From assembly GCA_002269645.1 (NCBI GenBank), contig NIVC01000828.1, forward strand, positions 54,978-92,003: a stretch of DNA of 37,026 bases, read 5' to 3'. A model generated the notes under the pieces. The model worked only from the letters and a program-made list of their open reading frames with translations. It did not search any database and was not told the origin of the DNA. Shown here in pieces: positions 1-29,235 of the stretch (positions are counted from its first letter, which is position 1; every line of letters begins with the position of its first letter). The position numbers and the translations under genes are program-made. The stretch comes from Macrostomum lignano. Lineage: Eukaryota.

Positions 1-48
1 AAATTTGGATCAGTTTTGCACATCAAAAACTGTTTTTATTACCTACCA

Positions 49-59
49 TTGATCTACAG
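49..59 (+). promoter_or_regulatory. Possible splice acceptor (TTGATCTACAG) at the AT-rich to GC-rich transition
   Basis: AT/pyrimidine-rich sequence ends in CAG at 57-59 and coding-like composition follows. An in-frame TGA at 208-210 argues against a simple join; an alternative acceptor is TTGCCTTTCGAGTCCAG (AG 232-233). Confidence 0.3.
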
Positions 60-210
60 GCAGCGTGAAAGCGCAGTCACTATGCAGTGCAAGTCACCGG
101 GAGCTCGCAGACAGAGCGGTCATATCGGTAACGAACTCGCAGAGCATGGACACACACCGATCTTCTATTCGAAGGTAGAAGGGCAGCCTTCGCGACAGTC
201 GCGAGTCTGA

Positions 211-3200
211 GTGGTATTGCCTTTCGAGTCCAGGCCAGTCGACCTAACCAGCATCCGGGATCTGACAGTCGCCAAGGATCAGGTCCGCCAGCAGCTCAGA
301 CGTGCGTCAATGAGCGAGAGCACGCAGACCAAACCGCCCCCAAGGAGTCCGGTGGGGCTCCTGTCTCCCACTTCGAAATCTGTGCAGGCCGGTTATTCGG
401 AATATCGACAGAACTCTACTCAGGATATTGAGGATCCAGTATTTCGTCAGGCTGTGTACAACTACATTCAAGAGTACGAGTCCGAAGTAAAACGCTACCT
501 GCACGAAAATATTCCGAGTCCGATAGTGCACTCTCAGTCCGCGTACGCTGCTGCGTCGGCATCTGAGGGCCGATCCCAGCTGAGAGTTGACGTCGAAGAA
601 AAGTTAGAGTACTCGGAAACGCGAAAGCTTGCAACGGCCATTTCGAGCTCCAATGAAAGCGAAGCGAATGCGACTTCAAGCTCAGGCTCCGGCACCGGTG
701 CTGCTGTTGGAAAAACCCAAGCAGTCACGCGCGAGGCTGGCTGTCAAACTGCGCAGATACCAATAGCCAGCACAGGTTGCGATAAGCAGAGCGTCATGGC
801 GGAGAGCAAGATTGCCTGCCACCTGCACTATACTGTGCAGAATGATCTGTTCTGTCTAGAAATAGAAAGCAGCGACTCAGAGACTCAAACAGATCAGTCT
901 GGCCAAACAGTGGAGACGGAAGAGAAACTCATTAAGTACGAAAGCCGGGTTGATGAGAGAGTCGAAAGACAAAGCGTAGACATCGAGATAAAAATCGAAG
1001 AGGAGACAAACCGTAAAAAGCTCATGGCAACTCAACCACCTGAGAAAGTAGAAGTTCAAGATGCCTGCGTAAAAACGACCTGTGAAACAGAGGAATCGGT
1101 TTTAGTTGTTAAGCAACAAATAAAATATATGCAACTGTCTCAGGAGCTAGTCACTGCCGAACAGGGAGTCAACTGCGTAATCGAAAACCAAATTTCAGAT
1201 TTTGAGTGTTCATTTGACCTGGAATTTGCGGATAGCAGTGTAAATTGCAAAACTGAAGAAAAAACTCAGGAAATCAGCACTTGCGAAGTGCACTATGAGA
1301 ACCACTTTTAGTGAAGCCGCTCTTTCAAACAGATTCTTTCACAGGCGAAAGCAGCATCTCCGTAAGCCCAAAACTTGCGTGCATGAGCGTTGAAATGGAA
1401 ATTTCAACCGAAGATGCGTCTGTTTTATGCAAAGATGAGACAAAAAATTCGAGAGTGTTTCTCCCACTTAGAAAATCTTATAAGGAAAGCAACACCAAAG
1501 CACAGATAACAACGAAAGACGTTTCTGTAACAGCCAAACAAGTCGTCAGCGAACTGGGATTTGCTGAAGAAGTGCAAAAAATCAAAGCAGTTAACAGCAA
1601 CGTAAAATTCAGTAACATGCCGAAAATTCTAGAGTGCAACAGCTCGCTTGAACTTATGCACGAAAATGCTGGTGTACGAGCACAGCCGACCGTAGATGAG
1701 ATGGGCGTCTGTGAGCAAGTTATGTTCTCTGATGGTGCCATGAGATTCAAGGATGAACCGAAGGTCGAAGAGTGCGCCAGCTCGCTTGAGTTGTTGGTCA
1801 AGTCAGGCTTCGTTCGTACGAAAACTAAAGTCCAAGAAGCTTCTGTGCAAGTCAATCAAGAAGTCGGAGAGATTGGCGTATACAACGAGGTACTAAGCGC
1901 GAGCGAAAACGTAAGATTCAAGGACGAACCGCAGGTCGAAGAGTGCACCAGCTCGCTTGAGTTGTTGGTCAAGTCAGGCTTCGTTCGTACGAAAACTAAA
2001 GTCCAAGAAGCTTCTGTGCAAGTCAATCAAGAAGTCGGAGAGATTGGCGTATACAACGAGGTACTCAGCGCGAGCGAAAACGTGAGATTCAAGGACGAAC
2101 CGAAAGTTGAAGAGTGCGCCAGCTCGCATGAGCTTATACACAAAACGACTGGTGTGCGAGCACAGCCAACCGTGGATGAGATGGGCGCTTATGAGACGCT
2201 GCTCACATCAGACGGGTCGGTACGCTACAAAGAAGAGCCGAAGCTCAACGAATGCGCCTCATTCCTGGAAACGACTGTCTTGAGTGAGTCATTCGAGTAA
2301 GCCAGAGTGTGAACGAAATGGGCTTCTGTGAGATGTTGGAGACATCAGACACGACAATGCGCTACAAAGAAGAGCAAGAAGTGAGAGACTGCGCATCGTT
2401 CCTCGAGACATCCGTCATGATAGGATCTGTTCGAGTGAAACAAGAAATAGACGACATGGGCGTCTGTGAGATGCTGCTCGCATCAGACGCTTCGGTACGA
2501 TACAAGGAGGAGCCGAAACTCGACGAGTGCTTCACATTCTCCGAGACCACATTCCTGGAAGGCGCTATCCGAGTAGAGACACTTGTGAAGGAGGCTTCAG
2601 TTCAAGTGGAACAGTCAGTCGATGGAATGGGCGTCTGTGAGATGCTGCTCACATCAGACGGGTCGGTACGCTACAAGGAAGAGCCGAAACTCGACGAGTG
2701 CTTCACATTCTCCGAGACCACATTCCTGGAAGGCGCTATCCGAGTAGAGACACTTGTGAAGGAGGATTCAGTTCAAGTGGAACAGTCAGTCGATGGAATG
2801 GGCGTCTGTGAGATGCTGCTCGCATCAGACGCTTCGTACGATACAAGGAGGAGCCGAAACTCGACGAGTGCTTCACATTCTCCGAGACCACATTCCTGGA
2901 AGGCGCTATCCGAGTAGAGACACTTGTGAAGGAGGCTTCAGTTCAAGTGGAACAGCCAGTCGATGGAATGGGCGTCTGTGAGATGCTGCTCACATCAGAC
3001 GGGTCGGTACGCTACAAGGAAGAGCCGAAACTCGACGAGTGCTTAACATTCTCCGAGACCACATTCCTGGAAGGCGCTATCCGAGTAGAGACACTTGTGA
3101 AGGAGGCTTCAGTTCAAGTGGAACAGCCAGTCGATGGAATGGGCGTCTGTGAGATGCTGCTCACATCAGACGGGTCGGTACGCTACAAGGAAGAGCCGAA

Positions 3201-6200
3201 ACTCGACGAGTGCTTCACATTCTCCGAGACCACATTCCTGGAAGGCGCTATCCGAGTAGAGACACTTGTGAAGGAGGCTTCAGTTCAAGTGGAACAGTCA
3301 GTCGATGGAATGGGCGTCTGTGAGATACTGCTCACATCAGACGGGTCGGTACGCTACAAGGAAGAGCCGAAGCTCAACGAATGCGCCTCATTCCTGGAAA
3401 CGACTGTCTTGAGTGAGTCCATTCGAGTAAGCCAGAGTGTGAACGAAATGGGCTTCTGTGAGATGTTGGAGACATCAGACACGACAATGCGCTACAAAGA
3501 AGAGCTAGAAGTGAGAGACTGCGCATCGTTCCTCGAGACATCCGTCATGATAGGATCTGTTCGAGTGACACAAGAAATAGACGACATGGGCGTCTGTGAG
3601 ATGCTGCTCGCATCAGACGCTTCGGTACGATACAAGGAGGAGCCGAAACTCGACGAGTGCTTCACATTCTCCGAGACCACATTCCTGGAAGGCGCTATCC
3701 GAGTAGAGACACTTGTGAAGGAGGCTTCAGTTCAAGTGGAACAGCCAGTCGATGGAATGGGCGTCTGTGAGATGCTGCTCACATCAGACGGGTCGGTACG
3801 CTACAAGGAAGAGCCGAAACTCGACGAGTGCTTCACATTCTCCGAGACCACATTCCTGGAAGGCGCTATCCGAGTAGAGACACTTGTTAAGGAGGCTTCA
3901 GTTCAAGTGGAACAGTCAGTCGATGGAATGGGCGTCTGTGAGATGCTGCTCACATCAGACGGGTCGGTACGCTACAAGGAGGAGCCGAAACTCGACGAGT
4001 GCTTCACATTCTCCGAGACCTCATTCATGGAAGGCGCTATCCGAGTAGAGACACTTGTGAAGGAGGCTTCAGTTCAAGTGGAACAGTCAGTCGATGGAAT
4101 GGGCGTCTGTGAGATACTGCTCACATCAGACGGGTCGGTACGCTACAAGGAAGAGCCGAAGCTCAACGAATGCGCCTCATTCCTGGAAACGACTGTCTTG
4201 AGTGAGTCCATTCGAGTAAGCCAGAGTGTGAACGAAATGGGCTTCTGTGAGATGTTGGAGACATCAGACACGACAATGCGCTACAAAGAAGAGCTAGAAG
4301 TGAGAGACTGCGCATCGTTCCTCGAGACATCCGTCATGATAGGATCTGTTCGAGTGACACAAGAAATAGACGACATGGGCGTCTGTGAGATGCTGCTCGC
4401 ATCAGACGCTTCGGTACGATACAAGGAGGAGCCGAAACTCGACGAGTGCTTCACATTCTCCGAGACCTCATTCATGGAAGGCGCTATCCGAGTAGAGACA
4501 CTTGTGAAGGAGGCTTCAGTTCAAGTGGAACAGTCAGTCGATGGAATGGGCGTCTGTGAGATACTGCTCACATCAGACGGGTCGGTACGCTACAAGGAAG
4601 AGCCGAAGCTCAACGAATGCGCCTCATTCCTGGAAACGACTGTCTTGAGTGAGTCCATTCGAGTAAGCCAGAGTGTGAACGAAATGGGCTTCTGTGAGAT
4701 GTTGGAGACATCAGACACGACAATGCGCTACAAAGAAGAGCTAGAAGTGAGAGACTGCGCATCGTTCCTCGAGACATCCGTCATGATAGGATCTGTTCGA
4801 GTGACACAAGAAATAGACGACATGGGCGTCTGTGAGATGCTGCTCGCATCAGACGCTTCGGTACGATACAAGGAGGAGCCGAAACTCGACGAGTGCTTCA
4901 CATTCTCCGAGACCACATTCCTGGAAGGCGCTATCCGAGTAGAGACACTTGTGAAGGAGGCTTCAGTTCAAGTGGAACAGCCAGTCGATGGAATGGGCGT
5001 CTGTGAGATGCTGCTCACATCAGACGGGTCGGTACGCTACAAGGAAGAGCCGAAACTCGACGAGTGCTTAACATTCTCCGAGACCACATTCCTGGAAGGC
5101 GCTATCCGAGTAGAGACACTTGTGAAGGAGGCTTCAGTTCAAGTGGAACAGCCAGTCGATGGAATGGGCGTCTGTGAGATGCTGCTCACATCAGACGGGT
5201 CGGTACGCTACAAGGAAGAGCCGAAACTCGACGAGTGCTTCACATTCTCCGAGACCACATTCCTGGAAGGCGCTATCCGAGTAGAGACACTTGTGAAGGA
5301 GGCTTCAGTTCAAGTGGAACAGTCAGTCGATGGAATGGGCGTCTGTGAGATGCTGCTCACATCAGACGGGTCGGTACGCTACAAGGAAGAGCCGAAACTC
5401 GACGAGTGCTTCACATTCTCCGAGACCACATTCCTGGAAGGCGCTATCCGAGTAGAGACACTTGTGAAGGAGGCTTCAGTTCAAGTGGAACAGTCAGTCG
5501 ATGGAATGGGCGTCTGTGAGATGCTGCTCACATCAGACGGGTCGGTACGCTACAAGGAAGAGCCGAAACTCGACGAGTGCTTCACATTCTCCGAGACCAC
5601 ATTCCTGGAAGGCGCTATCCGAGTAGAGACACTTGTGAAGGAGGCTTCAGTTCAAGTGGAACAGTCAGTCGATGGAATGGGCGTCTGTGAGATGCTGCTC
5701 ACATCAGACGGGTCGGTACGCTACAAGGAAGAGCCGAAACTCGACGAGTGCTTCACATTCTCCGAGACCACATTCCTGGAAGGCGCTATCCGAGTAGAGA
5801 CACTTGTGAAGGAGGCTTCAGTTCAAGTGGAACAGTCAGTCGATGGAATGGGCGTCTGTGAGATACTGCTCACATCAGACGGGTCGGTACGCTACAAGGA
5901 AGAGCCGAAGCTCAACGAATGCGCCTCATTCCTGGAAACGACTGTCTTGAGTGAGTCCATTCGAGTAAGCCAGAGTGTGAACGAAATGGGCTTCTGTGAG
6001 ATGTTGGAGACATCAGACACGACAATGCGCTACAAAGAAGAGCTAGAAGTGAGAGACTGCGCATCGTTCCTCGAGACATCCGTCATGATAGGATCTGTTC
6101 GAGTGACACAAGAAATAGACGACATGGGCGTCTGTGAGATGCTGCTCGCATCAGACGCTTCGGTACGATACAAGGAGGAGCCGAAACTCGACGAGTGCTT

Positions 6201-9200
6201 CACATTCTCCGAGACCACATTCCTGGAAGGCGCTATCCGAGTAGAGACACTTGTGAAGGAGGCTTCAGTTCAAGTGGAACAGTCAGTCGATGGAATGGGC
6301 GTCTGTGAGATGCTGCTCACATCAGACGGGTCGGTACGCTACAAGGAAGAGCCGAAACTCGACGAGTGCTTCACATTCTCCGAGACCACATTCCTGGAAG
6401 GCGCTATCCGAGTAGAGACACTTGTGAAGGAGGCTTCAGTTCAAGTGGAACAGTCAGTCGATGGAATGGGCGTCTGTGAGATGCTGCTCACATCAGACGG
6501 GTCGGTACGCTACAAGGAAGAGCCGAAACTCGACGAGTGCTTCACATTCTCCGAGACCACATTCCTGGAAGGCGCTATCCGAGTAGAGACACTTGTGAAG
6601 GAGGCTTCAGTTCAAGTGGAACAGTCAGTCGATGGAATGGGCGTCTGTGAGATGCTGCTCACATCAGACGGGTCGGTACGCTACAAGGAAGAGCCGAAAC
6701 TCGACGAGTGCTTCACATTCTCCGAGACCACATTCCTGGAAGGCGCTATCCGAGTAGAGACACTTGTGAAGGAGGCTTCAGTTCAAGTGGAACAGTCAGT
6801 CGATGGAATGGGCGTCTGTGAGATGCTGCTCACATCAGACGGGTCGGTACGCTACAAGGAAGAGCCGAAACTCGACGAGTGCTTCACATTCTCTGAGACC
6901 ACATTCCTGGAAGGCGCTATCCGAGTAGAGACACTTGTGAAGGAGGCTTCAGTTCAAGTGGAACAGTCAGTCGATGGAATGGGCGTCTGTGAGATGCTGC
7001 TCACATCAGACGGGTCGGTACGCTACAAGGAAGAGCCGAAACTCGACGAGTGCTTCACATTCTCCGAGACCACATTCCTGGAAGGCGCTATCCGAGTAGA
7101 GACACTTGTGAAGGAGGCTTCAGTTCAAGTGGAACAGTCAGTCGATGGAATGGGCGTCTGTGAGATGCTGCTCACATCAGACGGGTCGGTACGCTACAAG
7201 GAAGAGCCGAAGCTCAACGAATGCGCCTCATTCCTGGAAACGACTGTCTTGAGTGAGTCCATTCGAGTAAGCCAGAGTGTGAACGAAATGGGCTTCTGTG
7301 AGATGTTGGAGACATCAGACACGACAATGCGCTACAAAGAAGAGCTAGAAGTGAGAGACTGCGCATCGTTCCTCGAGACATCCGTCATGATAGGATCTGT
7401 TCGAGTGACACAAGAAATAGACGACATGGGCGTCTGTGAGATGCTGCTCGCATCAGACGCTTCGGTACGATACAAGGAGGAGCCGAAACTCGACGAGTGC
7501 TTCACATTCTCCGAGACCACATTCCTGGAAGGCGCTATCCGAGTAGAGACACTTGTGAAGGAGGCTTCAGTTCAAGTGGAACAGCCAGTCGATGGAATGG
7601 GCGTCTGTGAGATGCTGCTCACATCAGACGGGTCGGTACGCTACAAGGAAGAGCCGAAACTCGACGAGTGCTTCACATTCTCCGAGACCACATTCCTGGA
7701 AGGCGCTATCCGAGTAGAGACACTTGTGAAGGAGGCTTCAGTTCAAGTGGAACAGTCAGTCGATGGAATGGGCGTCTGTGAGATGCTGCTCACATCAGAC
7801 GGGTCGGTACGCTACAAGGAAGAGCCGAAACTCGACGAGTGCTTCACATTCTCCGAGACCACATTCCTGGAAGGCGCTATCCGAGTAGAGACACTTGTGA
7901 AGGAGGCTTCAGTTCAAGTGGAACAGTCAGTCGATGGAATGGGCGTCTGTGAGATGCTGCTCACATCAGACGGGTCGGTACGCTACAAGGAAGAGCCGAA
8001 GCTCAACGAATGCGCCTCATTCCTGGAAACGACTGTCTTGAGTGAGTCCATTCGAGTAAGCCAGAGTGTGAACGAAATGGGCTTCTGTGAGATGTTGGAG
8101 ACATCAGACACGACAATGCGCTACAAAGAAGAGCTAGAAGTGAGAGACTGCGCATCGTTCCTCGAGACATCCGTCATGATAGGATCTGTTCGAGTGACAC
8201 AAGAAATAGACGACATGGGCGTCTGTGAGATGCTGCTCGCATCAGACGCTTCGGTACGATACAAGGAGGAGCCGAAACTCGACGAGTGCTTCACATTCTC
8301 CGAGACCACATTCCTGGAAGGCGCTATCCGAGTAGAGACACTTGTGAAGGAGGCTTCAGTTCAAGTGGAACAGTCAGTCGATGGAATGGGCGTCTGTGAG
8401 ATGCTGCTCACATCAGACGGGTCGGTACGCTACAAGGAAGAGCCGAAACTCGACGAGTGCTTCACATTCTCCGAGACCACATTCCTGGAAGGCGCTATCC
8501 GAGTAGAGACACTTGTGAAGGAGGCTTCAGTTCAAGTGGAACAGTCAGTCGATGGAATGGGCGTCTGTGAGATGCTGCTCACATCAGACGGGTCGGTACG
8601 CTACAAGGAAGAGCCGAAACTCGACGAGTGCTTCACATTCTCCGAGACCACATTCCTGGAAGGCGCTATCCGAGTAGAGACACTTGTGAAGGAGGCTTCA
8701 GTTCAAGTGGAACAGTCAGTCGATGGAATGGGCGTCTGTGAGATGCTGCTCACATCAGACGGGTCGGTACGCTACAAGGAAGAGCCGAAACTCGACGAGT
8801 GCTTCACATTCTCCGAGACCACATTCCTGGAAGGCGCTATCCGAGTAGAGACACTTGTGAAGGAGGCTTCAGTTCAAGTGGAACAGTCAGTCGATGGAAT
8901 GGGCGTCTGTGAGATGCTGCTCACATCAGACGGGTCGGTACGCTACAAGGAAGAGCCGAAACTCGACGAGTGCTTCACATTCTCTGAGACCACATTCCTG
9001 GAAGGCGCTATCCGAGTAGAGACACTTGTGAAGGAGGCTTCAGTTCAAGTGGAACAGTCAGTCGATGGAATGGGCGTCTGTGAGATGCTGCTCACATCAG
9101 ACGGGTCGGTACGCTACAAGGAAGAGCCGAAACTCGACGAGTGCTTCACATTCTCCGAGACCACATTCCTGGAAGGCGCTATCCGAGTAGAGACACTTGT

Positions 9201-12200
9201 GAAGGAGGCTTCAGTTCAAGTGGAACAGTCAGTCGATGGAATGGGCGTCTGTGAGATGCTGCTCACATCAGACGGGTCGGTACGCTACAAGGAAGAGCCG
9301 AAGCTCAACGAATGCGCCTCATTCCTGGAAACGACTGTCTTGAGTGAGTCCATTCGAGTAAGCCAGAGTGTGAACGAAATGGGCTTCTGTGAGATGTTGG
9401 AGACATCAGACACGACAATGCGCTACAAAGAAGAGCTAGAAGTGAGAGACTGCGCATCGTTCCTCGAGACATCCGTCATGATAGGATCTGTTCGAGTGAC
9501 ACAAGAAATAGACGACATGGGCGTCTGTGAGATGCTGCTCGCATCAGACGCTTCGGTACGATACAAGGAGGAGCCGAAACTCGACGAGTGCTTCACATTC
9601 TCCGAGACCACATTCCTGGAAGGCGCTATCCGAGTAGAGACACTTGTGAAGGAGGCTTCAGTTCAAGTGGAACAGCCAGTCGATGGAATGGGCGTCTGTG
9701 AGATGCTGCTCACATCAGACGGGTCGGTACGCTACAAGGAAGAGCCGAAACTCGACGAGTGCTTCACATTCTCCGAGACCACATTCCTGGAAGGCGCTAT
9801 CCGAGTAGAGACACTTGTGAAGGAGGCTTCAGTTCAAGTGGAACAGTCAGTCGATGGAATGGGCGTCTGTGAGATGCTGCTCACATCAGACGGGTCGGTA
9901 CGCTACAAGGAGGAGCCGAAACTCGACGAGTGCTTCACATTCTCCGAGACCTCATTCATGGAAGGCGCTATCCGAGTAGAGACACTTGTGAAGGAGGCTT
10001 CAGTTCAAGTGGAACAGTCAGTCGATGGAATGGGCGTCTGTGAGATGCTGCTCACATCAGTCGGGTCGGTAAGCTACAAGGAAGAGCTTGAAGTAAAAGA
10101 GTGCGCATCCTTCCTCGAGACTTCGGTCATGGTCGGCTCCGTTCGAGCGAAACAAGAAGTACACGGCATGGGCGTCTGTGAGATGCTGCAGACATCAGTC
10201 GGGTCGGTACGCTACAAGGAAGAGCTTGAAGTAAGAGAGTGCGCATCCTTCCTCGAGACTTCGGTTATGGTCGGCTCCGTTCGAGCGAAACAGGATGTGA
10301 AGGACATGGGCGTCTGTGAGATGCTGCAGACATCGGACTCGACAATGCGCTACAAAGAAGAGCTAGAAGTGAGAGAATGCGCTTCGTTCCTTGAGACATC
10401 CTTCATGGTCGGCTCCGTTCGAGCGAAACAGGATGTGGAGGACATGGGCGTCTGTGAGATGCTGCAGACATCAGTCGGGTCGGTACGCTACAAGGAAGAG
10501 CTTGAAGTAAGAGAGTGCGCATCCTTCCTCGAGACTTCGGTCATGGTCGGCTCCGTTCGAGCGAAACAAGAAGTAGACGGCATGGGCGTCTGTGAGATGC
10601 TGCAGACATCAGTCGGGTCGGTACGCTACAAGGAAGAGCTTGAAGTGAGAGAATGCGCTTCGTTCCTTGAGACATCCTTCATGGTCGGCTCCGTTCGAGC
10701 GAAACAGGATGTGGAGGACATGGGCGTCTGTGAGATGCTGCAGACATCAGTCGGGTCGGTACGCTACAAGGAAGAGCTTGAAGTAAGAGAGTGCGCATCC
10801 TTCCTCGAGACTTCGGTCATGGTCGGCTCCGTTCGAGCGAAACAGGATGTGGAGGACATGGGCGTCTGTGAGATGCTGCAGACATCGGACTCGACAATGC
10901 GCTACAAAGAAGAGCTAGAAGTGAGAGAATGCGCTTCGTTCCTTGAGACATCCTTCATGGTCGGCTCCGTTCGAGCGAAACAGGATGTGGAGGACATGGG
11001 CGTCTGTGAGATGCTGCAGACATCAGTCGGGTCGGTACGCTACAAGGAAGAGCTTGAAGTAAGAGAGTGCGCATCCTTCCTCGAGACTTCGGTCATGGTC
11101 GGCTCCGTTCGAGCGAAACAGGATGTGGAGGACATGGGCGTCTGTGAGATGCTGCAGACATCAGTCGGTTCGGTACGCTACAAGGAAGAGCTTGAAGTAA
11201 GAGAGTGCGCATCCTTCCTCGAGACTTCGGTCATGGTCGGCTCCGTTCGAGCGAAACAGGATGTGGAGGACATGGGCGTCTGTGAGATGCTGCAGACATC
11301 GGACTCGACAATGCGCTACAAAGAAGAGCTAGAAGTGAGAGAATGCGCTTCGTTCCTTGAGACATCCTTCATGGTTGGCTCCGTTCGAGCGAAACAGGAT
11401 GTGGAGGACATGGGCGTCTGTGAGATGCTGCAGACATCAGTCGGGTCGGTACGCTACAAGGAAGAGCTTGAAGTAAGAGAGTGCGCATCCTTCCTCGAGA
11501 CTTCGGTCATGGTCGGCTCCGTTCGAGCGAAACAGGATGTGGAGGACATGGGCGTCTGTGAGATGCTGCAGACATCGGACTCGACAATGCGCTACAAAGA
11601 AGAGCTAGAAGTGAGAGAATGCGCTTCGTTCCTTGAGACATCCTTCATGGTCGGCTCCGTTCGAGCGAAACAGGATGTGGAGGACATGGGCGTCTGTGAG
11701 ATGCTGCAGACATCAGTCGGGTCGGTACGCTACAAGGAAGAGCTTGAAGTAAGAGAGTGCGCATCCTTCCTCGAGACTTCGGTCATGGTCGGCTCCGTTC
11801 GAGCGAAACAGGATGTGGAGGACATGGGCGTCTGTGAGATGCTGCAGACATCAGTCGGGTCGGTACGCTACAAGGAAGAGCTTGAAGTAAGAGAGTGCGC
11901 ATCCTTCCTCGAGACTTCAGTCATGGTCGGCTCCGTTCGAGCGAAACAGGATGTGGAGGACATGGGCGTCTGTGAGATGCTGCAGACATCAGTCGGGTCG
12001 GTACGCTACAAAGAAGAGCTTGAAGTAAGAGAGTGCGCTTCGTTCCTTGAGACATCCTTCATGGTCGGATCCGTTCGAGCGAAACAGGATGTGGAGGACA
12101 TGGGCGTCTGTGAGATGCTGCAGACATCAGTCGGGTCGGTACGCTACAAGGAAGAGCTTGAAGTAAGAGAGTGCGCATCCTTCCTCGAGACTTCGGTCAT

Positions 12201-15200
12201 GGTCGGCTCCGTTCGAGCGAAACAAGAAGTAGACGGCATGGGCGTCTGTGAGATGCTGCAGACATCGGACTCGACAATGCGCTACAAAGAAGAGCTACAA
12301 GTGAGAGAATGCGCTTCGTTCCTTGAGACATCCTTCATGGTCGGCTCCGTTCGAGCGAAACAGGATGTGGAGGACATGGGCGTCTGTGAGATGCTGCAGA
12401 CATCAGTCGGTCGGTACGCTACAAGGAAGAGCTTGAAGTAAGAGAGTGCGCATCCTTCCTCGAGACTTCGGTCATGGTCGGCTCCGTTCGAGCGAAACAA
12501 GAAGTAGACGGCATGGGCGTCTGTGAGATGCTGCAGACATCAGTCGGGTCGGTACGCTACAAGGAAGAGCTTGAAGTAAGAGAGTGCGCATCCTTCCTCG
12601 AGACTTCGGTCATGGTCGGCTCTGTTCGAGCGAAACAAGAAGTAGACGGCATGGGCGTCTGTGAGATGCTGCAGACATCGGACTCGACAATGCGCTACAA
12701 AGAAGAGCTAGAAGTGAAAGAATGCGCTTCGTTCCTTGAGACATCCTTCATGGTCGGCTCCGTTCGAGCGAAACAGGATGTGGAGGACATGGGCGTCTGT
12801 GAGATGCTGCAGACATCAGTCGGGTCGGTACGCTACAAGGAAGAGCTTGAAGTAAGAGAGTGCGCATCCTTCCTCGAGACTTCGGTCATGGTCGGCTCCG
12901 TTCGAGCGAAACAGGATGTGGAGGACATGGGCGTCTGTGAGATGCTGCAGACATCGGACTCGACAATGCGCTACAAAGAAGAGCTAGAAGTGAGAGAATG
13001 CGCTTCGTTCCTTGAGACATCCTTCATGGTCGGCTCCGTTCGAGCGAAACAGGATGTGGAGGACATGGGCGTCTGTGAGATGCTGCAGACATCGGACTCG
13101 ACAATGCGCTACAAAGAAGAGCTAGAAGTGAGAGAATGCGCTTCGTTCCTTGAGACATCCTTCATGGTCGGCTCCGTTCGAGCGAAACAGGATGTGGAGG
13201 ACATGGGCGTCTGTGAGATGCTGCAGACATCAGTCGGGTCGGTACGCTACAAGGAAGAGCTTGAAGTAAGAGAGTGCGCATCCTTCCTCGAGACTTCGGT
13301 CATGGTCGGCTCCGTTCGAGCGAAACAGGATGTGGAGGACATGGGCGTCTGTGAGATGCTGCAGACATCAGTCGGGTCGGTACGCTACAAGGAAGAGCTT
13401 GAAGTAAGAGAGTGCGCATCCTTCCTCGAGACTTCGGTCATGGTCGGCTCTGTTCGAGCGAAACAAGAAGTAGACGGCATGGGCGTCTGTGAGATGCTGC
13501 AGACATCGGACTCGACAATGCGCTACAAAGAAGAGCTAGAAGTGAAAGAATGCGCTTCGTTCCTTGAGACATCCTTCATGGTCGGCTCCGTTCGAGCGAA
13601 ACAGGATGTGGAGGACATGGGCGTCTGTGAGATGCTGCAGACATCAGTCGGGTCGGTACGCTACAAGGAAGAGCTTGAAGTAGAGAGTGCGCATCCTTCC
13701 TCGAGACTTCGGTCATGGTCGGCTCCGTTCGAGCGAAACAAGAAGTAGACGGCATGGGCGTCTGTGAGATGCTGCAGACATCGGACTCGACAATGCGCTA
13801 CAAAGAAGAGCTAGAAGTGAGAGAATGCGCTTCGTTCCTTGAGACATCCTTCATGGTCGGCTCCGTTCGAGCGAAACAGGATGTGGAGGACATGGGCGTC
13901 TGTGAGATGCTGCAGACATCAGTCGGGTCGGTACGCTACAAGGAAGAGCTTGAAGTAAGAGAGTGCGCATCCTTCCTCGAGACTTCGTCATGGTCGGCTC
14001 CGTTCGAGCGAAACAGGATGTGGAGGACATGGGCGTCTGTGAGATGCTGCAGACATCGGACTCGACAATGCGCTACAAAGAAGAGCTAGAAGTGAGAGAA
14101 TGCGCTTCGTTCCTTGAGACATCCTTCATGGTCGGCTCCGTTCGAGCGAAACAGGATGTGGAGGACATGGGCGTCTGTGAGATGCTGCAGACATCAGTCG
14201 GGTCGGTACGCTACAAGGAAGAGCTTGAAGTAAGAGAGTGCGCATCCTTCCTCGAGACTTCAGTCGTGGTCGGCTCCGTTCGAGCGAAACAGGATGTGGA
14301 GGACATGGGCGTCTGTGAGATGCTGCAGACATCGGACTCGACAATGCGCTACAAAGAAGAGCTAGAAGTGAGAGAATGCGCTTCGTTCCTTGAGACATCC
14401 TTCATGGTCGGCTCCGTTCGAGCGAAACAGGATGTGGAGGACATGGGCGTCTGTGAGATGCTGCAGACATCAGTCGGGTCGGTACGCTACAAGGAAGAGC
14501 TTGAAGTAAGAGAGTGCGCATCCTTCCTCGAGACTTCGGTCATGGTCGGCTCCGTTCGAGCGAAACAGATGTAGACGGCATGGGCGTCTGTGAGATGCTG
14601 CAGACATCGGACTCGACAATGCGCTACAAAGAAGAGCTAGAAGTGAAGAATGCGCTTCGTTCCTTGAGACATCCTTCATGGTCGGCTCCGTTCGAGCGAA
14701 ACAGGATGTGGAGGACATGGGCGTCTGTGAGATGCTGCAGACATCGGACTCGACAATGCGCTACAAAGAAGAGCTAGAAGTGAGAGAATGCGCTTCGTTC
14801 CTTGAGACATCCTCATGGTCGGCTCCGTTCGAGCGAAACAGGATGTGGAGGACATGGGCGTCTGTGAGATGCTGCAGACATCAGTCGGGTCGGTACGCTA
14901 CAAGGAAGAGCTTGAAGTAAGAGAGTGCGCATCCTTCCTCGAGACTTCGGTCATGGTCGGCTCCGTTCGAGCGAAACAGGATGTGGAGGACATGGGCGTC
15001 TGTGAGATGCTGCAGACATCAGTCGGGTCGGTACGCTACAAGGAAGAGCTTGAAGTAAGAGAGTGCGCATCCTTCCTCGAGACTTCGGTCATGGTCGGCT
15101 CCGTTCGAGCGAAACAGGATGTGGAGGACATGGGCGTCTGTGAGATGCTGCAGACATCGGACTCGACAATGCGCTACAAAGAAGAGCTAGAAGTGAGAGA

Positions 15201-18200
15201 ATGCGCTTCGTTCCTTGAGACATCCTTCATGGTCGGCTCCGTTCGAGCGAAACAGGATGTGGAGGACATGGGCGTCTGTGAGATGCTGCAGACATCAGTC
15301 GGGTCGGTACGCTACAAGGAAGAGCTTGAAGTAAGAGAGTGCGCATCCTTCCTCGAGACTTCGGTCATGGTCGGCTCCGTTCGAGCGAAACAGGATGTGG
15401 AGGACATGGGCGTCTGTGAGATGCTGCAGACATCAGTCGGGTCGGTACGCTACAAGGAAGAGCTTGAAGTAAGAGAGTGCGCATCCTTCCTCGAGACTTC
15501 GTCATGGTCGGCTCCGTTCGAGCGAAACAGGATGTGGAGGACATGGGCGTCTGTGAGATGCTGCAGACATCGGACTCGACAATGCGCTACAAAGAAGAGC
15601 TAGAAGTGAGAGAATGCGCTTCGTTCCTTGAGACATCCTTCATGGTCGGCTCCGTTCGAGCGAAACAGGATGTGGAGGACATGGGCGTCTGTGAGATGCT
15701 GCAGACATCAGTCGGGTCGGTACGCTACAAGGAAGAGCTTGAAGTAAGAGAGTGCGCATCCTTCCTCGAGACTTCGGTCATGGTCGGCTCCGTTCGAGCG
15801 AAACAGATGTAGAGGCATGGGCGTCTGTGAGATGCTGCAGACATCGGACTCGACAATGCGCTACAAAGAAGAGCTAGAAGTGAAGAATGCGCTTCGTTCC
15901 TTGAGACATCCTTCATGGTCGGCTCCGTTCGAGCGAAACAGGATGTGGAGGACATGGGCGTCTGTGAGATGCTGCAGACATCAGTCGGGTCGGTACGCTA
16001 CAAGGAAGAGCTTGAAGTAAGAGAGTGCGCATCCTTCCTCGAGACTTCCATGGTCGGCTCCGTTCGAGCGAAACAGATGTGGAGGACATGGGCGTCTGTG
16101 AGATGCTGCAGACATCGGACTCGACAATGCGCTACAAAGAAGAGCTAGAAGTGAGAGAATGCGCTTCGTTCCTTGAGACATCCTTCATGGTCGGCTCCGT
16201 TCGAGCGAAACAGGATGTGGAGGACATGGGCGTCTGTGAGATGCTGCAGACATCAGTCGGGTCGGTACGCTACAAGGAAGAGCTTGAAGTAAGAGAGTGC
16301 GCATCCTTCCTCGAGACTTCGTCATGGTCGGCTCCGTTCGAGCGAAACAGGATGTGGAGGACATGGGCGTCTGTGAGATGCTGCAGACATCGGACTCGAC
16401 AATGCGCTACAAAGAAGAGCTAGAAGTGAGAGAATGCGCTTCGTTCCTTGAGACATCCTTCATGGTCGGCTCCGTTCGAGCGAAACAGGATGTGGAGGAC
16501 ATGGGCGTCTGTGAGATGCTGCAGACATCAGTCGGGTCGGTACGCTACAAGGAAGAGCTTGAAGTAAGAGAGTGCGCATCCTTCCTCGAGACTTCGGTCA
16601 TGGTCGGCTCCGTTCGAGCGAAACAGAAGTAGACGGCATGGGCGTCTGTGAGATGCTGCAGACATCGGACTCGACAATGCGCTACAAAGAAGAGCTAGAA
16701 GTGAAGAATGCGCTTCGTTCCTTGAGACATCCTTCATGGTCGGCTCCGTTCGAGCGAAACAGGATGTGGAGGACATGGGCGTCTGTGAGATGCTGCAGAC
16801 ATCGGACTCGACAATGCGCTACAAAGAAGAGCTAGAAGTGAGAGAATGCGCTTCGTTCCTTGAGACATCCTTCATGGTCGGCTCCGTTCGAGCGAAACAG
16901 GATGTGGAGGACATGGGCGTCTGTGAGATGCTGCAGACATCAGTCGGGTCGGTACGCTACAAGGAAGAGCTTGAAGTAAGAGAGTGCGCATCCTTCCTCG
17001 AGACTTCGGTCATGGTCGGCTCCGTTCGAGCGAAACAGGATGTGGAGGACATGGGCGTCTGTGAGATGCTGCAGACATCAGTCGGGTCGGTACGCTACAA
17101 GGAAGAGCTTGAAGTAAGAGAGTGCGCATCCTTCCTCGAGACTTCGGTCATGGTCGGCTCCGTTCGAGCGAAACAGGATGTGGAGGACATGGGCGTCTGT
17201 GAGATGCTGCAGACATCGGACTCGACAATGCGCTACAAAGAAGAGCTAGAAGTGAGAGAATGCGCTTCGTTCCTTGAGACATCCTTCATGGTCGGCTCCG
17301 TTCGAGCGAAACAGGATGTGGAGGACATGGGCGTCTGTGAGATGCTGCAGACATCGGACTCGACAATGCGCTACAAAGAAGAGCTAGAAGTGAGAGAATG
17401 CGCTTCGTTCCTTGAGACATCCTTCATGGTCGGCTCCGTTCGAGCGAAACAGGATGTGGAGGACATGGGCGTCTGTGAGATGCTGCAGACATCGGACTCG
17501 ACAATGCGCTACAAAGAAGAGCTAGAAGTGAAGAATGCGCTTCGTTCCTTGAGACATCCTTCATGGTCGGCTCCGTTCGAGCGAAACAGGATGTGGAGGA
17601 CATGGGCGTCTGTGAGATGCTGCAGACATCAGTCGGGTCGGTACGCTACAAGGAAGAGCTTGAAGTAAGAGAGTGCGCATCCTTCCTCGAGACTTCGGTC
17701 ATGGTCGGCTCCGTTCGAGCGAAACAGGATGTGGAGGACATGGGCGTCTGTGAGATGCTGCAGACATCAGTCGGGTCGGTACGCTACAAGGAAGAGCTTG
17801 AAGTAAGAGAGTGCGCATCCTTCCTCGAGACTTCGGTCATGGTCGGCTCCGTTCGAGCGAAACAGGATGTGGAGGACATGGGCGTCTGTGAGATGCTGCA
17901 GACATCGGACTCGACAATGCGCTACAAAGAAGAGCTAGAAGTGAGAGAATGCGCTTCGTTCCTTGAGACATCCTTCATGGTCGGCTCCGTTCGAGCGAAA
18001 CAGGATGTGGAGGACATGGGCGTCTATGAGATGCTGCAGACATCGGACTCGACAATGCGCTACAAAGAAGAGCTAGAAGTGAGAGAATGCGCTTCGTTCC
18101 TTGAGACATCCTTCATGGTCGGCTCCGTTCGAGCGAAACAGGATGTGGAGGACATGGGCGTCTGTGAGATGCTGCAGACATCAGTCGGGTCGGTACGCTA

Positions 18201-25894: not shown

Positions 25895-26218
25895 TTTTTT
25901 AATTTGATACAAAATGGATAAAATTTTATGATTTTTCTAAGTAGCAAGAAACTTTCGCCAGTTTTAATCTCCTCAACGTTTTTGTGCTTTTTTAGCTTCA
26001 GAAACGTTGAAATATTTATTAGTTTTGTGTTTTAGGTAGCTAAGAAGTAGATGGGCCCCTGCTTTTGCTATATTGCAATTGGGGATCTTTTTAGTTGTAT
26101 TTAACTAAACTTGGTGCAGCGAAATTCGAGTTATTGGCTGTCAGCTGTAAATTTTATGCAGCTTTTTAAAATCTTACAAATTAAGGTAGCATGAAGTGAG
26201 CAGGTTAATGCTTAATGG

Positions 26219-26224
26219 AATAAA
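26219..26224 (+). promoter_or_regulatory. Candidate polyadenylation signal for the giant-repeat gene
   Basis: AATAAA 325 bp after the TAA at 25894. The motif is common by chance in AT-rich DNA. Confidence 0.25.
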
Positions 26225-26460
26225 ATCACAGTACCATTAAGGTAGTCTAACTTATATATACTTTTTATTGCATACGTGGTGCAAGCCAGTGAGTTGTGGC
26301 CTGTCTATTGTTTTAATATCGGTCCAAATTACCCGTACAATATAAAGTTGCTTTTTTCGTTTCAACGAGTACCCTATTTTCTTGTGGTCATGAATATCTT
26401 TTAAACATTGAAATCAAACATTCATGGATTATGCAGGTATTTAAAAATAATTTTGTTGAT

Positions 26461-26784
26461 CAGTGGCGGATCCAGGAATTCTGTTTGGGAAGTGGCGGAC
26501 TGTCAGGGGGCGCCAATGACAATCACAAATGGGGGCGCCAGGGGGCCAATGTTGCGCCAGTGGAGCTAGGTTTAGTTTATTACCCTTTGCTGTCTTAGTT
26601 GGGAGGGGCACTAAAAATCTTCATATGGGGTGGGCCAGTATCAGGGTGGGGGTCGCGCAGCAGATGTCAGTCTTTAAGCACCTGGATGAATCCTTTCCGT
26701 AAGGTCGGTGTGCATTGGCGTCAGTGGGGGCGCCATAAACCCATGACCGAAATTTTCCCCCCCGCCCCCCTAAATCCGCCCTTG
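26461..26784. mobile_element. Non-autonomous hAT-type MITE (324 bp) with 8-bp target-site duplication
   Basis: Left end CAGTGGCGGATCCAGG; right end reverse-complements to CAAGGGCGGATTTAGG (12/16 match). Flanks are TTGTTGAT (26453-26460) and TTGTTGCT (26785-26792), 7/8 identical. GC-rich island in AT-rich DNA. Confidence 0.85.
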
Positions 26785-27536
26785 TTGTTGCTTAACATTA
26801 TTTTTACTAAATAACACAATTCAATGTGAAAGTGAAACTGATTACAGTATAGTGACTAACATTAGATTTATCTTTTGTTTATTTGAACAATAATATATGT
26901 TACGTTTTACTGTGACGCATGCAGTAGTGCATCATTCGATTTTTTCAATTTTGCTCGTGGTAGTTATTACATTACTGTTATTACAGTAAATTATTATGTT
27001 TGATATCCAGTTTTTAGTTTTTTCAATTTACTTCCTAATATATTTATTTAAAGTTAGTTTAAAAACAGTGCTGAGCTGGCCTTGGATTTTTTTGCTATAA
27101 AACGGTCTCTTTGGGTGAAGATATTGCTCTTTGCTAGAGACATTGCTGCAAAATACTATGTGCTTCAGAATAGAGTCATACAAGTACATGTACGTCATTT
27201 TAAGTAGTTTTTCTATCATTCATAAAATAAATAGTAAATTCGTATCATTAGATAATCATATACGATGCTCTATCATTCGTTGAAACTTACTCTACATTTG
27301 CTTAAGTCTTTAACATTGTAAAATGGTTGGTTTTACGTTACCCTACGTGCGTACTTGTACCAGTAAGATAGCTTGTATATACGCGTATACACGTGTTCTA
27401 TATTGCTACATCTACATGTGTGATAGCTATGATGCACGGACGCGTGGCGACAATGATGCAATTCGATATTACTATATAGTAAACAATGATAAATTATTAT
27501 TATTACACTTAAATTATTATTATAATAGTAACGCGC

Positions 27537-29214: not shown

Positions 29215-29235
29215 TTGGTAATATGAAAAGGCCCC

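What the first reader, a model, noticed from the sequence alone, without database searches (positions are those of the whole stretch)
310..10071. Dozens of LC8/DYNLL-type docking motifs, carried by an 11-aa module that is inserted or absent in each repeat
Seen: the unique region has SESTQTK (~313-333), EAGCQTA (733-753) and DSETQTD (874-894). The 57-aa unit differs from the 46-aa unit by an 11-aa block (about ETLVKEASVQV), so E(A/D)SVQV(E/N) occurs in 33 A units and 2 founder units; the tail has SVGVQC and DASAQV. Known: dynein light chain LC8 binds short beta-strand motifs of the form x-x-x-[TVI]-Q-[TV]-[DE] (TQT in Bim and ASCIZ, GIQVD in nNOS) and forms multivalent ladders on tandem sites. 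Inference: this may be an extreme multivalent LC8 scaffold, with site number set by repeat expansion of the A unit.
Basis: partly seen in the sequence, partly recalled or inferred. Interest (0 to 1): 0.7.

Follow-up and report, generated by a model that had tools for sequence, protein, structure and literature searches.

The report
Flatworm giant plakin repeat with VQV module
The region is the front part of one giant exon of a Macrostomum lignano (flatworm) plakin-type cytoskeletal linker gene made of about 164 copies of an otherwise unknown 46/57-residue repeat; the 35 "EASVQV" sites are real and conserved, but whether they bind the dynein light chain LC8 cannot be decided from sequence, and several features argue against it.

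Summary
There are 35 E[AD]SVQV[EN] sites (33 A units plus 2 founder units), two TQT, one CQT, and SVGVQC and DASAQV in the tail, all at the stated coordinates. The window is Macrostomum lignano scaffold NIVC01000828.1:54978-92003. Bases 59-25894 are one terminal exon (about 8,600 codons) of a gene whose upstream exons encode a desmoplakin/plectin-type plakin domain. The frameshifts are single-base assembly errors.

The repeat is coding (dN/dS 0.15-0.5) and was found only in M. lignano. EASVQV is the best-conserved stretch of the 57-aa units across A units, founder units and a tandem paralog, with synonymous codon differences. It is therefore under selection.

For LC8:
- VQV anchors with +2 E or N are validated in GKAP and ATMIN.
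- Strong TQT/SQT candidates lie in the disordered linker.

Against LC8:
- The site has no Gly at -2, and Ala at -3.
- My PSSM places it in the bottom 8% of validated binders.
- Spacers are 49 residues long, conserved, hydrophobic, Cys-bearing and Pro-poor.
- The segment is homologous to an S-V-R-[VA]-x-Q strand present in every unit.
- AlphaFold2 gives an all-beta stack, at low confidence.

The most likely reading is an extra beta-strand module of an orphan repeat (about 0.45). LC8 docking gets about 0.25.

The parts
1..58 (+). End of an intron, with polypyrimidine tract and ctacag acceptor
   Evidence: Sequence read. Annotated proteins P0001 and P0002 continue ...SVQ|QRESQSLAVQV across this point. 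The window starts directly after a 1,505-N scaffold gap.
59..25894 (+). Single giant terminal exon (about 8,611 codons, stop TAA at 25892-25894) of a plakin-domain gene. The reading frame is broken only by single-base assembly errors.
   Evidence: Open-frame map. All odd-length units are 1-4 bases short and otherwise identical to intact units. The second copy on the same scaffold differs by 1-2 substitutions against about 55 indel columns and is open where the window is broken. dN/dS between unit types is 0.15-0.5. P0002 is 100% identical.
59..1553 (+). Acidic non-repeat linker between the plakin domain and the repeats. It holds the Q-centred candidates AVQVT (84-98), SSQTD (102-115), STQTK (322-330), GCQTA (742-750) and ETQTD (883-891).
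   Evidence: Coordinates. PSSM scores: VTGSSQTD 11.4, SDSETQTD 18.6, MSESTQTK 3.8, REAGCQTA 5.5, QSLAVQVT 4.9. FoldIndex is negative, reaching its minimum (-0.41) just past the ETQTD site. BLASTP places the first TQT opposite a TQT (TSCATQTD, 16.5 bits) of the paralog.
1554..2455 (+). Diverged founder units. Two are 57-aa units carrying QEASVQVN (1836-1856 and 2007-2027).
2456..10029 (+). A/B/C zone: 33 A units (57 aa, VKEASVQVEQ) in runs of 5,3,1,6,6,3,6,3, separated by seven B-C pairs (46 aa each, SIRVSQ / SVRVTQ).
10030..25714 (+). About 113 D units (46 aa, ...GSVRAKQDVED) with Arg in place of the motif's Gln. This zone holds about 33 single-base deletions from assembly.
25715..25894 (+). 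Short non-repeat tail with SSVGVQCN (25712-25729) and DASAQVF (25811-25828), then the stop codon.
   Evidence: SSVGVQCN scores 8.5 bits and ADASAQVF 3.6 bits, the latter with a poor anchor and a hydrophobic +2. The tail is about 93% identical in homeolog P0005.

Best explanation
Bases 310-10071 lie inside one giant exon of a Macrostomum lignano plakin-family cytolinker gene.

Shown:
- Upstream exons, outside the window, encode a desmoplakin/plectin-type plakin domain with its SH3.
- The exon encodes an acidic, probably disordered linker of about 500 residues, followed by about 164 tandem copies of an orphan, acidic 46-residue repeat known only from this species.
- The repeat is under purifying selection.
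- Every unit ends in an amphipathic segment S-[VI]-[RQ]-[VA]-x-Q-x-V.
- The 57-residue units carry two such segments in tandem. The first has Arg (IRV/VRT/ARA). The second has Gln (SVQV).
- The second segment is maintained by selection in A units, in founder units and in a tandem paralog.

Inferred:
- The repeats are beta-strand-rich and at least partly structured, as a stacked or serpentine beta array that serves as the rod or tail of this plakin.
- The EASVQV segment is an extra strand of that structure, not a free linear docking motif.
- The number of 57-aa units changes by unequal exchange of units and blocks.
- Any LC8 binding by this protein is more likely to occur at the TQT/SQT sites of the linker (SDSETQTD, VTGSSQTD) than at the 35 repeat sites.
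For: Identity and gene family:
- P0002 (NCBI BOX15_Mlig031564g3) is 100% identical, and P0001 is named an SH3_10 domain protein.
- PF17902 SH3_10 scores E=7.6e-12.
- PDB sequence hits are desmoplakin 3r6n and plectin 3pe0.

Coding and constrained:
- Unit lengths of 138 and 171 bp are multiples of three.
- dN/dS is 0.15-0.5 among unit types and against the paralog.

Orphan family:
- A profile search of 1.84 billion representative proteins found only M. lignano proteins.
- There is no real Pfam or PDB match.

The strand segment is shared by all units:
- The alignments show it.
- Gap placement is ambiguous over codons 36-46. With the gap after codon 36, A 'SVQVEQSVDG' aligns to D2 'SVRAKQEVDG' at 7 of 10 positions.

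Conservation:
- Sliding 8-residue identity across A, F1 and P57 peaks at 0.92 on V44-Q53. A second block, R15-P20, reaches 0.75.
- Six of nine invariant module columns carry synonymous differences.

Context is not like a disordered region:
- 37-39% of window-unit residues (28-30% in the paralog) are VILMFWYC. There is an invariant Cys, 0-1 Pro per unit in the window units (up to 2 in the paralog), and FoldIndex is +0.02 to +0.16.

AlphaFold2:
- Four units gave pLDDT 29, with hairpin strands that include SVQVEQ.
- Eight units gave pLDDT 51 and pTM 0.59, all beta. The D part scored 50-70 and the A part 35-52.

Linker sites:
- All PSSM hits of at least 4 bits in P0001 and P0002 fall after the plakin domain.
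Against: - No confident fold was obtained. The A-unit part of both models is below pLDDT 52, which is also what a disordered region gives.
- Foldseek found nothing significant. The best hit was E=0.2 with TM 0.10, and the nominal hits are beta-solenoids and curli.
- Island-like conservation of an 8-10-residue stretch next to a poorly conserved stretch (positions 26-41, identity 0.17-0.33) is what a functional linear motif looks like.
- The conserved face (A47, V49, V51) and Q50 correspond to the LC8-contacting positions -3, -1, +1 and 0.
- Weak sites can bind LC8 in a multivalent context (PMC12057147).
- The internal-duplication origin of the module is not supported at DNA level: 13 of 33 identities, no better than other segments.
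Confidence: 0.45

Rival explanations
1. The 35 [KQ]EASVQV[EN] segments are non-canonical LC8/DYNLL docking sites. LC8 dimers zip two chains in register, and the linker TQT/SQT sites nucleate the process. This plakin has no coiled-coil rod in the window, so it would dimerise and stiffen through an LC8 ladder. Valency would be set by A-unit copy number.
For: - VQV and IQV anchors are validated, and GVQVE (GKAP) and GVQVN (ATMIN) share anchor and +2 residue with these sites.
- Ser at -2 with Val at -1 occurs in the binders RHQSVQTE and RCVSVQTD.
- E at +2 and a polar -4 fit the published rules.
- The flank-only binder versus non-binder discriminant for KEASVQVE is +5.0; the binder median is 4.4.
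- The module shows island-like conservation with synonymous changes.
- The paralog's 46-aa unit has AAGIQVKQ.
- Strong linker sites SDSETQTD and VTGSSQTD exist, and a TQT matches by position in the paralog.
- AF2 pLDDT is below 52 for the A units.
- A multivalent context rescues weak sites.
Against: - The full PSSM score of 7.6 bits is in the bottom 8% of binders and below 56% of anchor-containing non-binders. The paralog and founder versions score 4.5-5.3.
- Ala at -3 is disfavoured, with only two Ala among tight binders.
- All five validated [VI]QV sites have Gly at -2.
- Known motifs lie in disordered regions: IUPred at least 0.42 in all but one (PMC5746249). Here the context is hydrophobic, Cys-bearing, Pro-poor and conserved throughout.
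- The 49-residue spacers are in the long-linker regime that lowers cooperativity.
- 129 of 164 units have Arg at position 0.
- The homeolog has few A units in its last 10 kb, and one of them has a stop at the Gln codon.
Confidence: 0.25
2. The module is a linear motif or modification site for something other than LC8. Examples are a beta-strand-addition site for another partner, such as intermediate filaments or another copy of the same protein, or a glutamine-donor site for transglutaminase cross-linking, as in the envelope-forming plakins.
For: - The conservation island covers V44-x-EASVQV-x-Q-x-V. It extends beyond the 8-residue LC8 footprint to Q at +3 and V at +5.
- Conserved Lys (K17) and Gln residues occur in every unit.
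- The plakin context is established.
- From general knowledge only, not tested here: envoplakin, periplakin and desmoplakin are transglutaminase substrates.
Against: No candidate partner or enzyme motif was tested. Nothing in the sequence specifically points to transglutaminase. The context arguments against an exposed motif apply here as well.
Confidence: 0.12
3. The 11-residue difference is a neutral length variant that spread by unequal crossing-over. The resemblance to an LC8 motif is chance in a Val/Gln/Glu-rich beta-prone sequence.
For: - The 33 copies are one event amplified.
- A hit this good arises 0.03 times per shuffled unit, so about 0.3 times over roughly nine unit types.
- The number of A units differs greatly between homeologs.
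Against: - EASVQV is invariant across A units, founders and the paralog despite 40-50% divergence elsewhere.
- Synonymous differences occur in 6 of 9 invariant module columns.
- Both unit lengths predate the gene duplication.
Confidence: 0.1
4. The array is non-coding satellite DNA or a decayed pseudogene, and the peptide motifs are meaningless.
For: Frameshifts occur at about 208, 1300, 2290 and 2900, and about 33 times after 12376. Some deletions recur at the same unit offset.
Against: - Every length anomaly is a deletion of 1-4 bases, and all but one such unit (the diverged founder at 2181) is otherwise identical or within one mismatch of an intact unit.
- The other copy on the scaffold is open across the window's breaks. 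It differs almost only by indels: 1 substitution against 38 gap columns in 6.9 kb, and 16 of 17 differences in the first 2.4 kb.
- dN/dS is 0.15-0.5.
- The homeolog array is in frame for 59 of 67 units.
Confidence: 0.03

Closest known systems
ASCIZ/ATMIN, the archetypal multivalent LC8 client (also Nup159, KANK1)
   Same: It has many Q-centred 8-mers on one chain, a mix of strong and weak sites, and one validated VQV site (ISTGVQVN) whose anchor and +2 residue match the founder and paralog sites.
   Different: - ASCIZ sites differ from one another and sit in a disordered domain, with variable linkers of 1-41 residues.
- Here there are 35 near-identical sites spaced by 49 conserved, hydrophobic, Cys-bearing residues, and 141 residues across the B-C pairs.
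- Valency would be about three times the 11 human ATMIN sites in the LC8Pred binder table.
- No binding has been shown.
GKAP/DLGAP1 non-canonical LC8 sites (QSVGVQVE, LSIGIQVD) and nNOS KDTGIQVD
   Same: They share the [VI]-Q-V anchor followed by an acidic residue. GKAP's GVQVE differs from SVQVE at one position (PMC12797016 listed).
   Different: All validated members have Gly at -2 and V, I, L or T at -3. Here these are Ser at -2 and Ala at -3, with Glu at -4.
Plakin family cytolinkers: desmoplakin, plectin, and Drosophila Shot and C. elegans VAB-10A isoforms with a giant plakin-repeat exon
   Same: There is a plakin domain with the SR-SH3 module, followed by one very large exon of tandem repeats. 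[quoted passage not shown]
   Different: - The repeats are not plakin repeats. There is no PF00681 or other Pfam hit above chance.
- The 46/57-residue unit has no relative outside M. lignano.
- No calponin-homology, spectrin-rod, EF-hand or GAR parts were seen in the annotated models.
Beta-solenoid / functional-amyloid repeat proteins (curli CsgA, FapC, autotransporter passengers)
   Same: The low-confidence AlphaFold2 model of eight units is an all-beta stack. These proteins are the nominal top Foldseek hits.
   Different: The matches are not significant (E at least 0.2, TM at most 0.18). Those proteins are extracellular and bacterial. This is a resemblance of a weak model only.

Membership tests
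LC8/DYNLL-binding linear motif (LC8Hub/LC8Pred definition) | Anchor triplet [T/V/I/S]-Q-[T/V/C] at positions -1, 0 and +1 | tested here: met
   VQV occurs in all 35 sites. VQV and IQV anchors are present in five of the 79 validated binders.
LC8/DYNLL-binding linear motif (LC8Hub/LC8Pred definition) | Favourable flanks: polar -4, large or basic -3, non-bulky -2, and D/E/P at +2. The overall score should fall in the range of validated binders. | tested here: inconclusive
   E at -4, S at -2 and E at +2 fit. Ala at -3 is disfavoured. My PSSM gives 7.6 bits, against a binder 10th percentile of 9.6 and median of 14.6, and a non-binder median of 8.8. The flank-only discriminant is +5.0, which is binder-like. 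The original LC8Pred matrices were not available, so this is an approximation.
LC8/DYNLL-binding linear motif (LC8Hub/LC8Pred definition) | Located in an intrinsically disordered region (IUPred at least 0.42 for all but one known motif, PMC5746249) | tested here: inconclusive
   IUPred was not available. FoldIndex of the units is +0.02 to +0.16, with 37% hydrophobic residues and 0-1 Pro. AF2 pLDDT is below 52 for A units, with predicted strands. The linker around ETQTD has FoldIndex -0.41.
LC8/DYNLL-binding linear motif (LC8Hub/LC8Pred definition) | Direct, Gln-dependent binding to the LC8 dimer groove | not testable with these tools
   This needs ITC, pull-down or a complex prediction.
LC8/DYNLL-binding linear motif (LC8Hub/LC8Pred definition) | Motif conserved in relatives | tested here: met
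   EASVQV is invariant in A, F1, F2 and the paralog's P57 unit, with synonymous codon differences. No orthologues from other species were found.
Multivalent LC8 scaffold (ASCIZ/Nup159 type) | Several motifs separated by short, variable, disordered linkers that allow in-register duplex ladders | tested here: not met
   The number of motifs is met. The linkers, however, are 49 residues long, conserved (dN/dS 0.15-0.5) and hydrophobic. ASCIZ linkers are 1-41 residues, and the long ones lower cooperativity.
Plakin family | Plakin domain (spectrin repeats with embedded SH3) | tested here: met
   It is encoded by upstream exons outside the window. PF17902 scores E=7.6e-12. Desmoplakin 3r6n and plectin 3pe0 score E of about 1e-8 to 1e-9.
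Plakin family | Plakin-repeat domains (PF00681) or a coiled-coil or spectrin rod after the plakin domain | tested here: not met
   There is no Plectin-repeat or spectrin hit in the linker or repeats. The only hits are scattered sub-domain matches inflated by repetition. Coiled-coil content was not tested.
Beta-solenoid / stacked-beta repeat proteins | A confident repetitive beta fold with structural matches | tested here: inconclusive
   AF2 on eight units gave pLDDT 51 and pTM 0.59. Foldseek had no hit with E at or below 0.001.

The most novel reading that the evidence does not exclude
This would be a plakin whose rod is built by LC8. The SSQTD/TQT sites in the linker and the 35 or more VQV modules would recruit LC8 dimers that pair two giant chains in register. 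The protein would then be by far the most multivalent LC8 client known, and an LC8 ladder would stand in for the coiled-coil rod of other plakins. Valency would evolve rapidly through unequal exchange of 57-aa units.
Probability: 0.2. Interest if true: 0.75.

Novelty: new variant of a known kind. Interest (0 to 1): 0.4.

Why it matters
Plakins are conserved cytoskeletal cross-linkers whose tails are normally plakin repeats or spectrin or coiled-coil rods. Here a flatworm lineage has put a species-restricted repeat of at least 8,000 residues in that place. This is a clean case of a new repeat taking over the tail of an old scaffold protein.

The EASVQV module is a short, strongly conserved element inside that repeat, and there is a concrete, cheap test for it: LC8 binding of one peptide against a Q-to-A control. 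A positive result would extend the known limits of LC8 multivalency and link LC8 to plakins. A negative result would leave a structural strand of an orphan beta repeat that is still worth a structure determination.

The work also shows that the gene is mis-annotated as several fragments because of indel errors and a gap in the Mlig_3_7 assembly.

Tried and rejected
- **Pfam on linker and repeat segments.** It returned only scattered hits (RRM_9, CBM_21, T6SS_Tdi1_C and others) with zero significant stretches and 20-40-residue overlaps. I rejected these as whole-protein scores inflated by repetition.
- **PDB sequence search with the unit profile.** Nothing was found; the best hit had E=1.1.
- **Foldseek of the eight-unit model against PDB.** Nothing was significant.
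- **Homology searches.**
  - The word-indexed search with A-A-A-D units found only M. lignano fragments.
  - The third search, with the last D units and the tail, returned nothing, even though P0005 exists.
  - The full profile search found only M. lignano proteins plus a spurious zinc-finger protein, P0006.
  - Comparison with other species was therefore impossible.
- **Internal-duplication origin of the 11-aa module.** DNA identity between the two halves is 13 of 33, no better than other in-frame segments. It remains only a suggestion from the shared pattern and the ambiguous gap placement.
- **Pseudogene or satellite reading.** Rejected on dN/dS and on the indel-only differences between the two scaffold copies.
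- **Rfam on the downstream 11 kb.** No hits.
- **Literature searches.** Searches for Macrostomum plus plakin terms, and for plakin plus LC8, found nothing relevant.

Full report
**What the window is**

The first 1,700 bases match protein P0002 (NCBI, hypothetical protein BOX15_Mlig031564g3, Macrostomum lignano) at 100%. They match P0001 (UniRef A0A1I8G870, 'SH3_10 domain-containing protein') at 79%.

The look-up of encoding contigs placed P0002 on scaffold NIVC01000828.1 (92,003 bp, assembly GCA_002269645.1). BLASTN shows that window base 1 equals locus L001 base 31218, so the window is NIVC01000828.1:54978-92003, the 3' end of the scaffold. The window begins directly after a run of 1,505 N.

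**Gene structure**

Bases 1-58 are the end of an intron, with a pyrimidine tract and a ctacag acceptor. From base 59 the annotated proteins read on (…QRESQSLAVQVTGSSQTDG…). Coding continues on the + strand to a TAA at 25892-25894, about 8,611 codons in one exon.

The upstream exons, outside the window, encode a plakin domain. PF17902 SH3_10 scores E=7.6e-12. PDB sequence matches are the desmoplakin (3r6n) and plectin (3pe0) plakin-domain structures.

**Frameshifts**

The reading frame is interrupted at about 208, 1300, 2290 and 2900, and about 33 times after 12376. I consider these assembly errors, for four reasons.

- Every aberrant unit is shorter than normal (137, 136, 135, 134 or 170 bp), and none is longer.
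- All but one aberrant unit (the diverged founder at 2181) is otherwise identical, or within one mismatch, to an intact unit, and most deletions fall in two-base runs.
- The same exon start and A array occur a second time on the scaffold, before the N gap (L001 20295-29712).
  - That copy is open (2,200 codons) where the window is broken.
  - In the first 2.4 kb, 16 of its 17 differences from the window are single-base indels.
  - Over 6.9 kb of array it differs by 1 substitution against 38 gap columns.
- A homeologous locus (L002) is in frame for 59 of 67 units.

Either the locus was assembled twice across a gap, or there is a very recent duplicate. In both cases the copy number of units is provisional.

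**Check of the observation**

- There are 35 E[AD]SVQV[EN] sites: two founder sites (1836, 2007) and 33 A-unit sites.
- TQT is at 322-330 and 883-891, and CQT at 742-750.
- SVGVQC is at 25712-25729 and DASAQV at 25811-25828.

The array has 164 units.

- Diverged founder units occupy 1554-2455.
- 33 A units (171 bp, 57 aa) lie in runs of 5,3,1,6,6,3,6,3, separated by seven B-C pairs (138 bp each), up to 10029.
- About 113 D units (138 bp) run to about 25714.

The A copies are 96-98% identical, so they are one site amplified, not 33 independent occurrences. A shuffled A unit yields a PSSM hit this good 0.03 times. The number of sites therefore carries little statistical weight.

The block that distinguishes 57- from 46-aa units cannot be delimited uniquely. 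Any gap position from codon 36 to codon 46 gives nearly equal identity, and MAFFT chose different solutions. With the gap after codon 36, the A-unit 'SVQVEQSVDG' aligns with the D-unit 'SVRAKQEVDG' at 7 of 10 positions. Under that alignment the VQV segment is the A-type version of a segment every unit has, with Gln for Arg.

**Is the repeat coding and constrained?**

Yes. Nei-Gojobori dN/dS is 0.15 (D1-D2), 0.26-0.43 among A, B, C and D, and 0.30-0.46 against the paralog's units.

**Relatives**

A profile of 16 units searched against 1.84 billion representative proteins found only M. lignano proteins.

- P0004 is a paralog, named by UniRef 'Desmoplakin SH3 domain-containing protein'.
- P0003 is a fragment of the same array.
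- P0005 is the tail of a homeolog.
- P0006, a zinc-finger protein, is a chance hit.

There is no real Pfam or PDB relative.

A paralogous gene lies immediately upstream on the same scaffold (L001 1-5690). It has strictly alternating units:

- P57: MGSCEQILTADGGMRYKDEPKLEACASSLEFSFEHGSARAASVVKEASVQVNQPVGA
- P46: MGAFDEVLTADGGMRYKDEPKLEACASSLELEYEAAGIQVKQAVSE

**Conservation of the module**

I compared three diverged 57-aa lineages: A, founder F1 and paralog P57.

- 24 of 57 columns are invariant.
- The longest invariant run is E46-A-S-V-Q-V51, flanked by invariant V44, Q53 and V55.
- Sliding 8-residue identity peaks at 0.92 there. It is 0.17-0.33 over positions 26-41, and 0.75 over the second block, R15-P20.
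- Six of the nine invariant module columns use different synonymous codons.

The amino-acid sequence is therefore held by selection and was not copied recently. This is the strongest point in favour of a specific function for the module.

**Fit to the LC8 motif**

I took the 79 validated binders and 32 anchor-containing non-binders from Table S4 of Jespersen et al. 2019 (PMC6607443), together with the paper's positional rules.

VQV and IQV anchors are validated in five binders: ISTGVQVN, QSVGVQVE, LSIGIQVD, KDLGIQVD and KDTGIQVD. The anchor and +2 residue of the sites here (VQVE, VQVN) match GKAP and ATMIN exactly.

All five validated sites, however, have Gly at -2 and V, I, L or T at -3. Here these positions are Ser and Ala, and the paper notes only two Ala at -3 among tight binders.

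I built a log-odds PSSM from the binders.

| 8-mer | Source | Score (bits) |
|---|---|---|
| KEASVQVE | A unit | 7.6 |
| QEASVQVN | founder unit | 5.3 |
| KEASVQVN | paralog P57 | 4.5 |
| EAAGIQVK | paralog P46 | 1.0 |
| SDSETQTD | linker | 18.6 (above 89% of binders and all non-binders) |
| VTGSSQTD | linker | 11.4 |
| TSCATQTD | paralog linker | 16.5 |
| MSESTQTK | linker | 3.8 |
| SSVGVQCN | tail | 8.5 |
| ADASAQVF | tail | 3.6 |

For reference, the leave-one-out binder 10th percentile is 9.6 and the median 14.6, and the non-binder median is 8.8. KEASVQVE is thus in the bottom 8% of binders and at the 44th percentile of non-binders.

BLASTP places TSCATQTD of the paralog opposite MSESTQTK. 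All hits of at least 4 bits in P0001 and P0002 lie after the plakin domain. This PSSM only approximates LC8Pred. A flank-only binder versus non-binder discriminant is favourable for KEASVQVE (+5.0).

**Context**

LC8 motifs lie in disordered regions. IUPred of at least 0.42 holds for all but one known motif (PMC5746249).

- The units here have 37-39% VILMFWYC (28-30% in the paralog's units), an invariant Cys25, a mostly conserved Cys4, conserved Gly and aromatic residues, 0-1 Pro in the window units (up to 2 in the paralog), and FoldIndex from +0.02 to +0.16.
- The linker is negative, reaching its minimum (-0.41) just past the ETQTD site.
- The whole unit is constrained, not only the module.
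- Site spacing is 57 residues, which leaves a 49-residue spacer. In Drosophila ASCIZ, linkers of 6-9 residues give homogeneous ladders, and linkers of 30-41 residues lower cooperativity and disfavour duplexes (PMC10046861).
- On the other side, weak sites of multivalent clients do bind (PMC12057147).

**Structure prediction**

- A-A-B-C (206 aa, 8-row alignment) gave mean pLDDT 28.8 and pTM 0.19. It has hairpin-like strands, including residues 48-53 (SVQVEQ).
- Three A plus five D units (401 aa) gave pLDDT 51.3 and pTM 0.59 in the best model, though three of the five models were below 26. The model is all beta, with long strands running from residue 20 of one unit to residue 8 of the next. The D part scored 50-70 and the A part 35-52.
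- Foldseek against the PDB gave nothing significant. The best hit had E=0.2 and TM 0.10, and the nominal hits are curli CsgA, FapC and autotransporter beta-helices.

It is neither met nor excluded.

**Copy-number change**

The A zone is built of higher-order blocks; for example, 6124 to 8215 is a 2,091-bp period of 6A+BC+3A+BC. The homeolog L002 has only four A units (two pairs) in the 10 kb before its tail. One of them reads EASV*VE, with TAA for CAA.

**Judgement**

The module is real, conserved and probably functional. The alternation V-x-E-A-S-V-Q-V-x-Q-x-V gives one face of A, V, V, (Q), V and one polar face, as in an amphipathic beta-strand. That pattern fits a strand in a beta-rich repeat, and it fits an LC8-bound strand equally well.

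Four things lead me to rank a structural strand first (0.45) and LC8 docking second (0.25): the non-IDR composition, whole-unit constraint, homology to the Arg-containing segment of all other units, and the weak flanks and long spacers. A different ligand or modification gets 0.12, a neutral variant 0.10, and non-coding DNA 0.03.

If the protein binds LC8 at all, SDSETQTD (883-891) and VTGSSQTD (102-115) in the linker are the likeliest sites.

**Novelty**

The gene models exist in databases as fragments of 'hypothetical protein'. I found no description of the repeat, nor of any plakin-LC8 link, in the searchable literature. What is present is a new variant of a known kind: a plakin-domain cytolinker with an orphan giant repeat in the position where Shot carries a giant plakin-repeat exon (PMC2173965).

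Noticed in passing
window 1-9400 versus L001 20295-29712 (NIVC01000828.1, either side of the N run at L001 29713-31217): The giant exon's start and A array are present twice on the scaffold. The two copies differ almost only by single-base indels. This is either a redundant assembly across a gap or a very recent duplication. The public annotation splits the gene into several fragment models (885, 406 and 1,826 aa).
   Followed up: partly
window 12376-25300: The single-base deletions in the D array recur at the same unit offsets, often about 820-827 bp apart, which is six units. This could reflect systematic consensus errors in identical contexts or errors and mutations propagated with a six-unit higher-order repeat. 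The two were not distinguished.
   Followed up: partly
L001 1-5690 (upstream on the same scaffold): A tandem paralog with a plakin SH3 domain has alternating 57/46-aa units (309-bp period, 13 or more copies). It has a non-repeat segment and then nine copies of a 23-aa repeat, VTRREGTALESTDSVSSARAQLG, near its C-terminus.
   Followed up: partly
L002 3223-3393 (homeolog, NIVC01000222.1): One A unit reads EASV*VE, with TAA in place of the motif's CAA codon. It may be a sequencing error or a real nonsense mutation. The public gene model restarts just after it.
   Followed up: no
window 35850-36965 (+): A calcineurin-like metallophosphoesterase gene fragment (GDxxDA…GNHD; Pfam Metallophos E=0.0016, below cutoff). 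A 27/55-bp tandem repeat at 36222-36719 stays open in two + frames. The same gene lies downstream of the homeolog's array in L002.
   Followed up: partly
window 10030-25714 versus 2456-10029: SVRA (GTT CGA GCG) in D units and SVQV (GTT CAA GTG) in A units differ by two transitions, both at CpG dinucleotides.
   Followed up: no
all units, positions 4 and 25: There are two conserved cysteines per unit (Cys25 invariant), so more than 300 Cys in what should be a cytoplasmic cytoskeletal protein. This hints at metal binding or oxidative or enzymatic cross-linking.
   Followed up: no
window 25900-35800: An AT-rich (25-43% GC) intergenic stretch with small tandem repeats: 37 bp x3 at 31781-31891 and an AG-rich microsatellite at 30007-30111. 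There were no Rfam hits and no convincing ORFs.
   Followed up: partly
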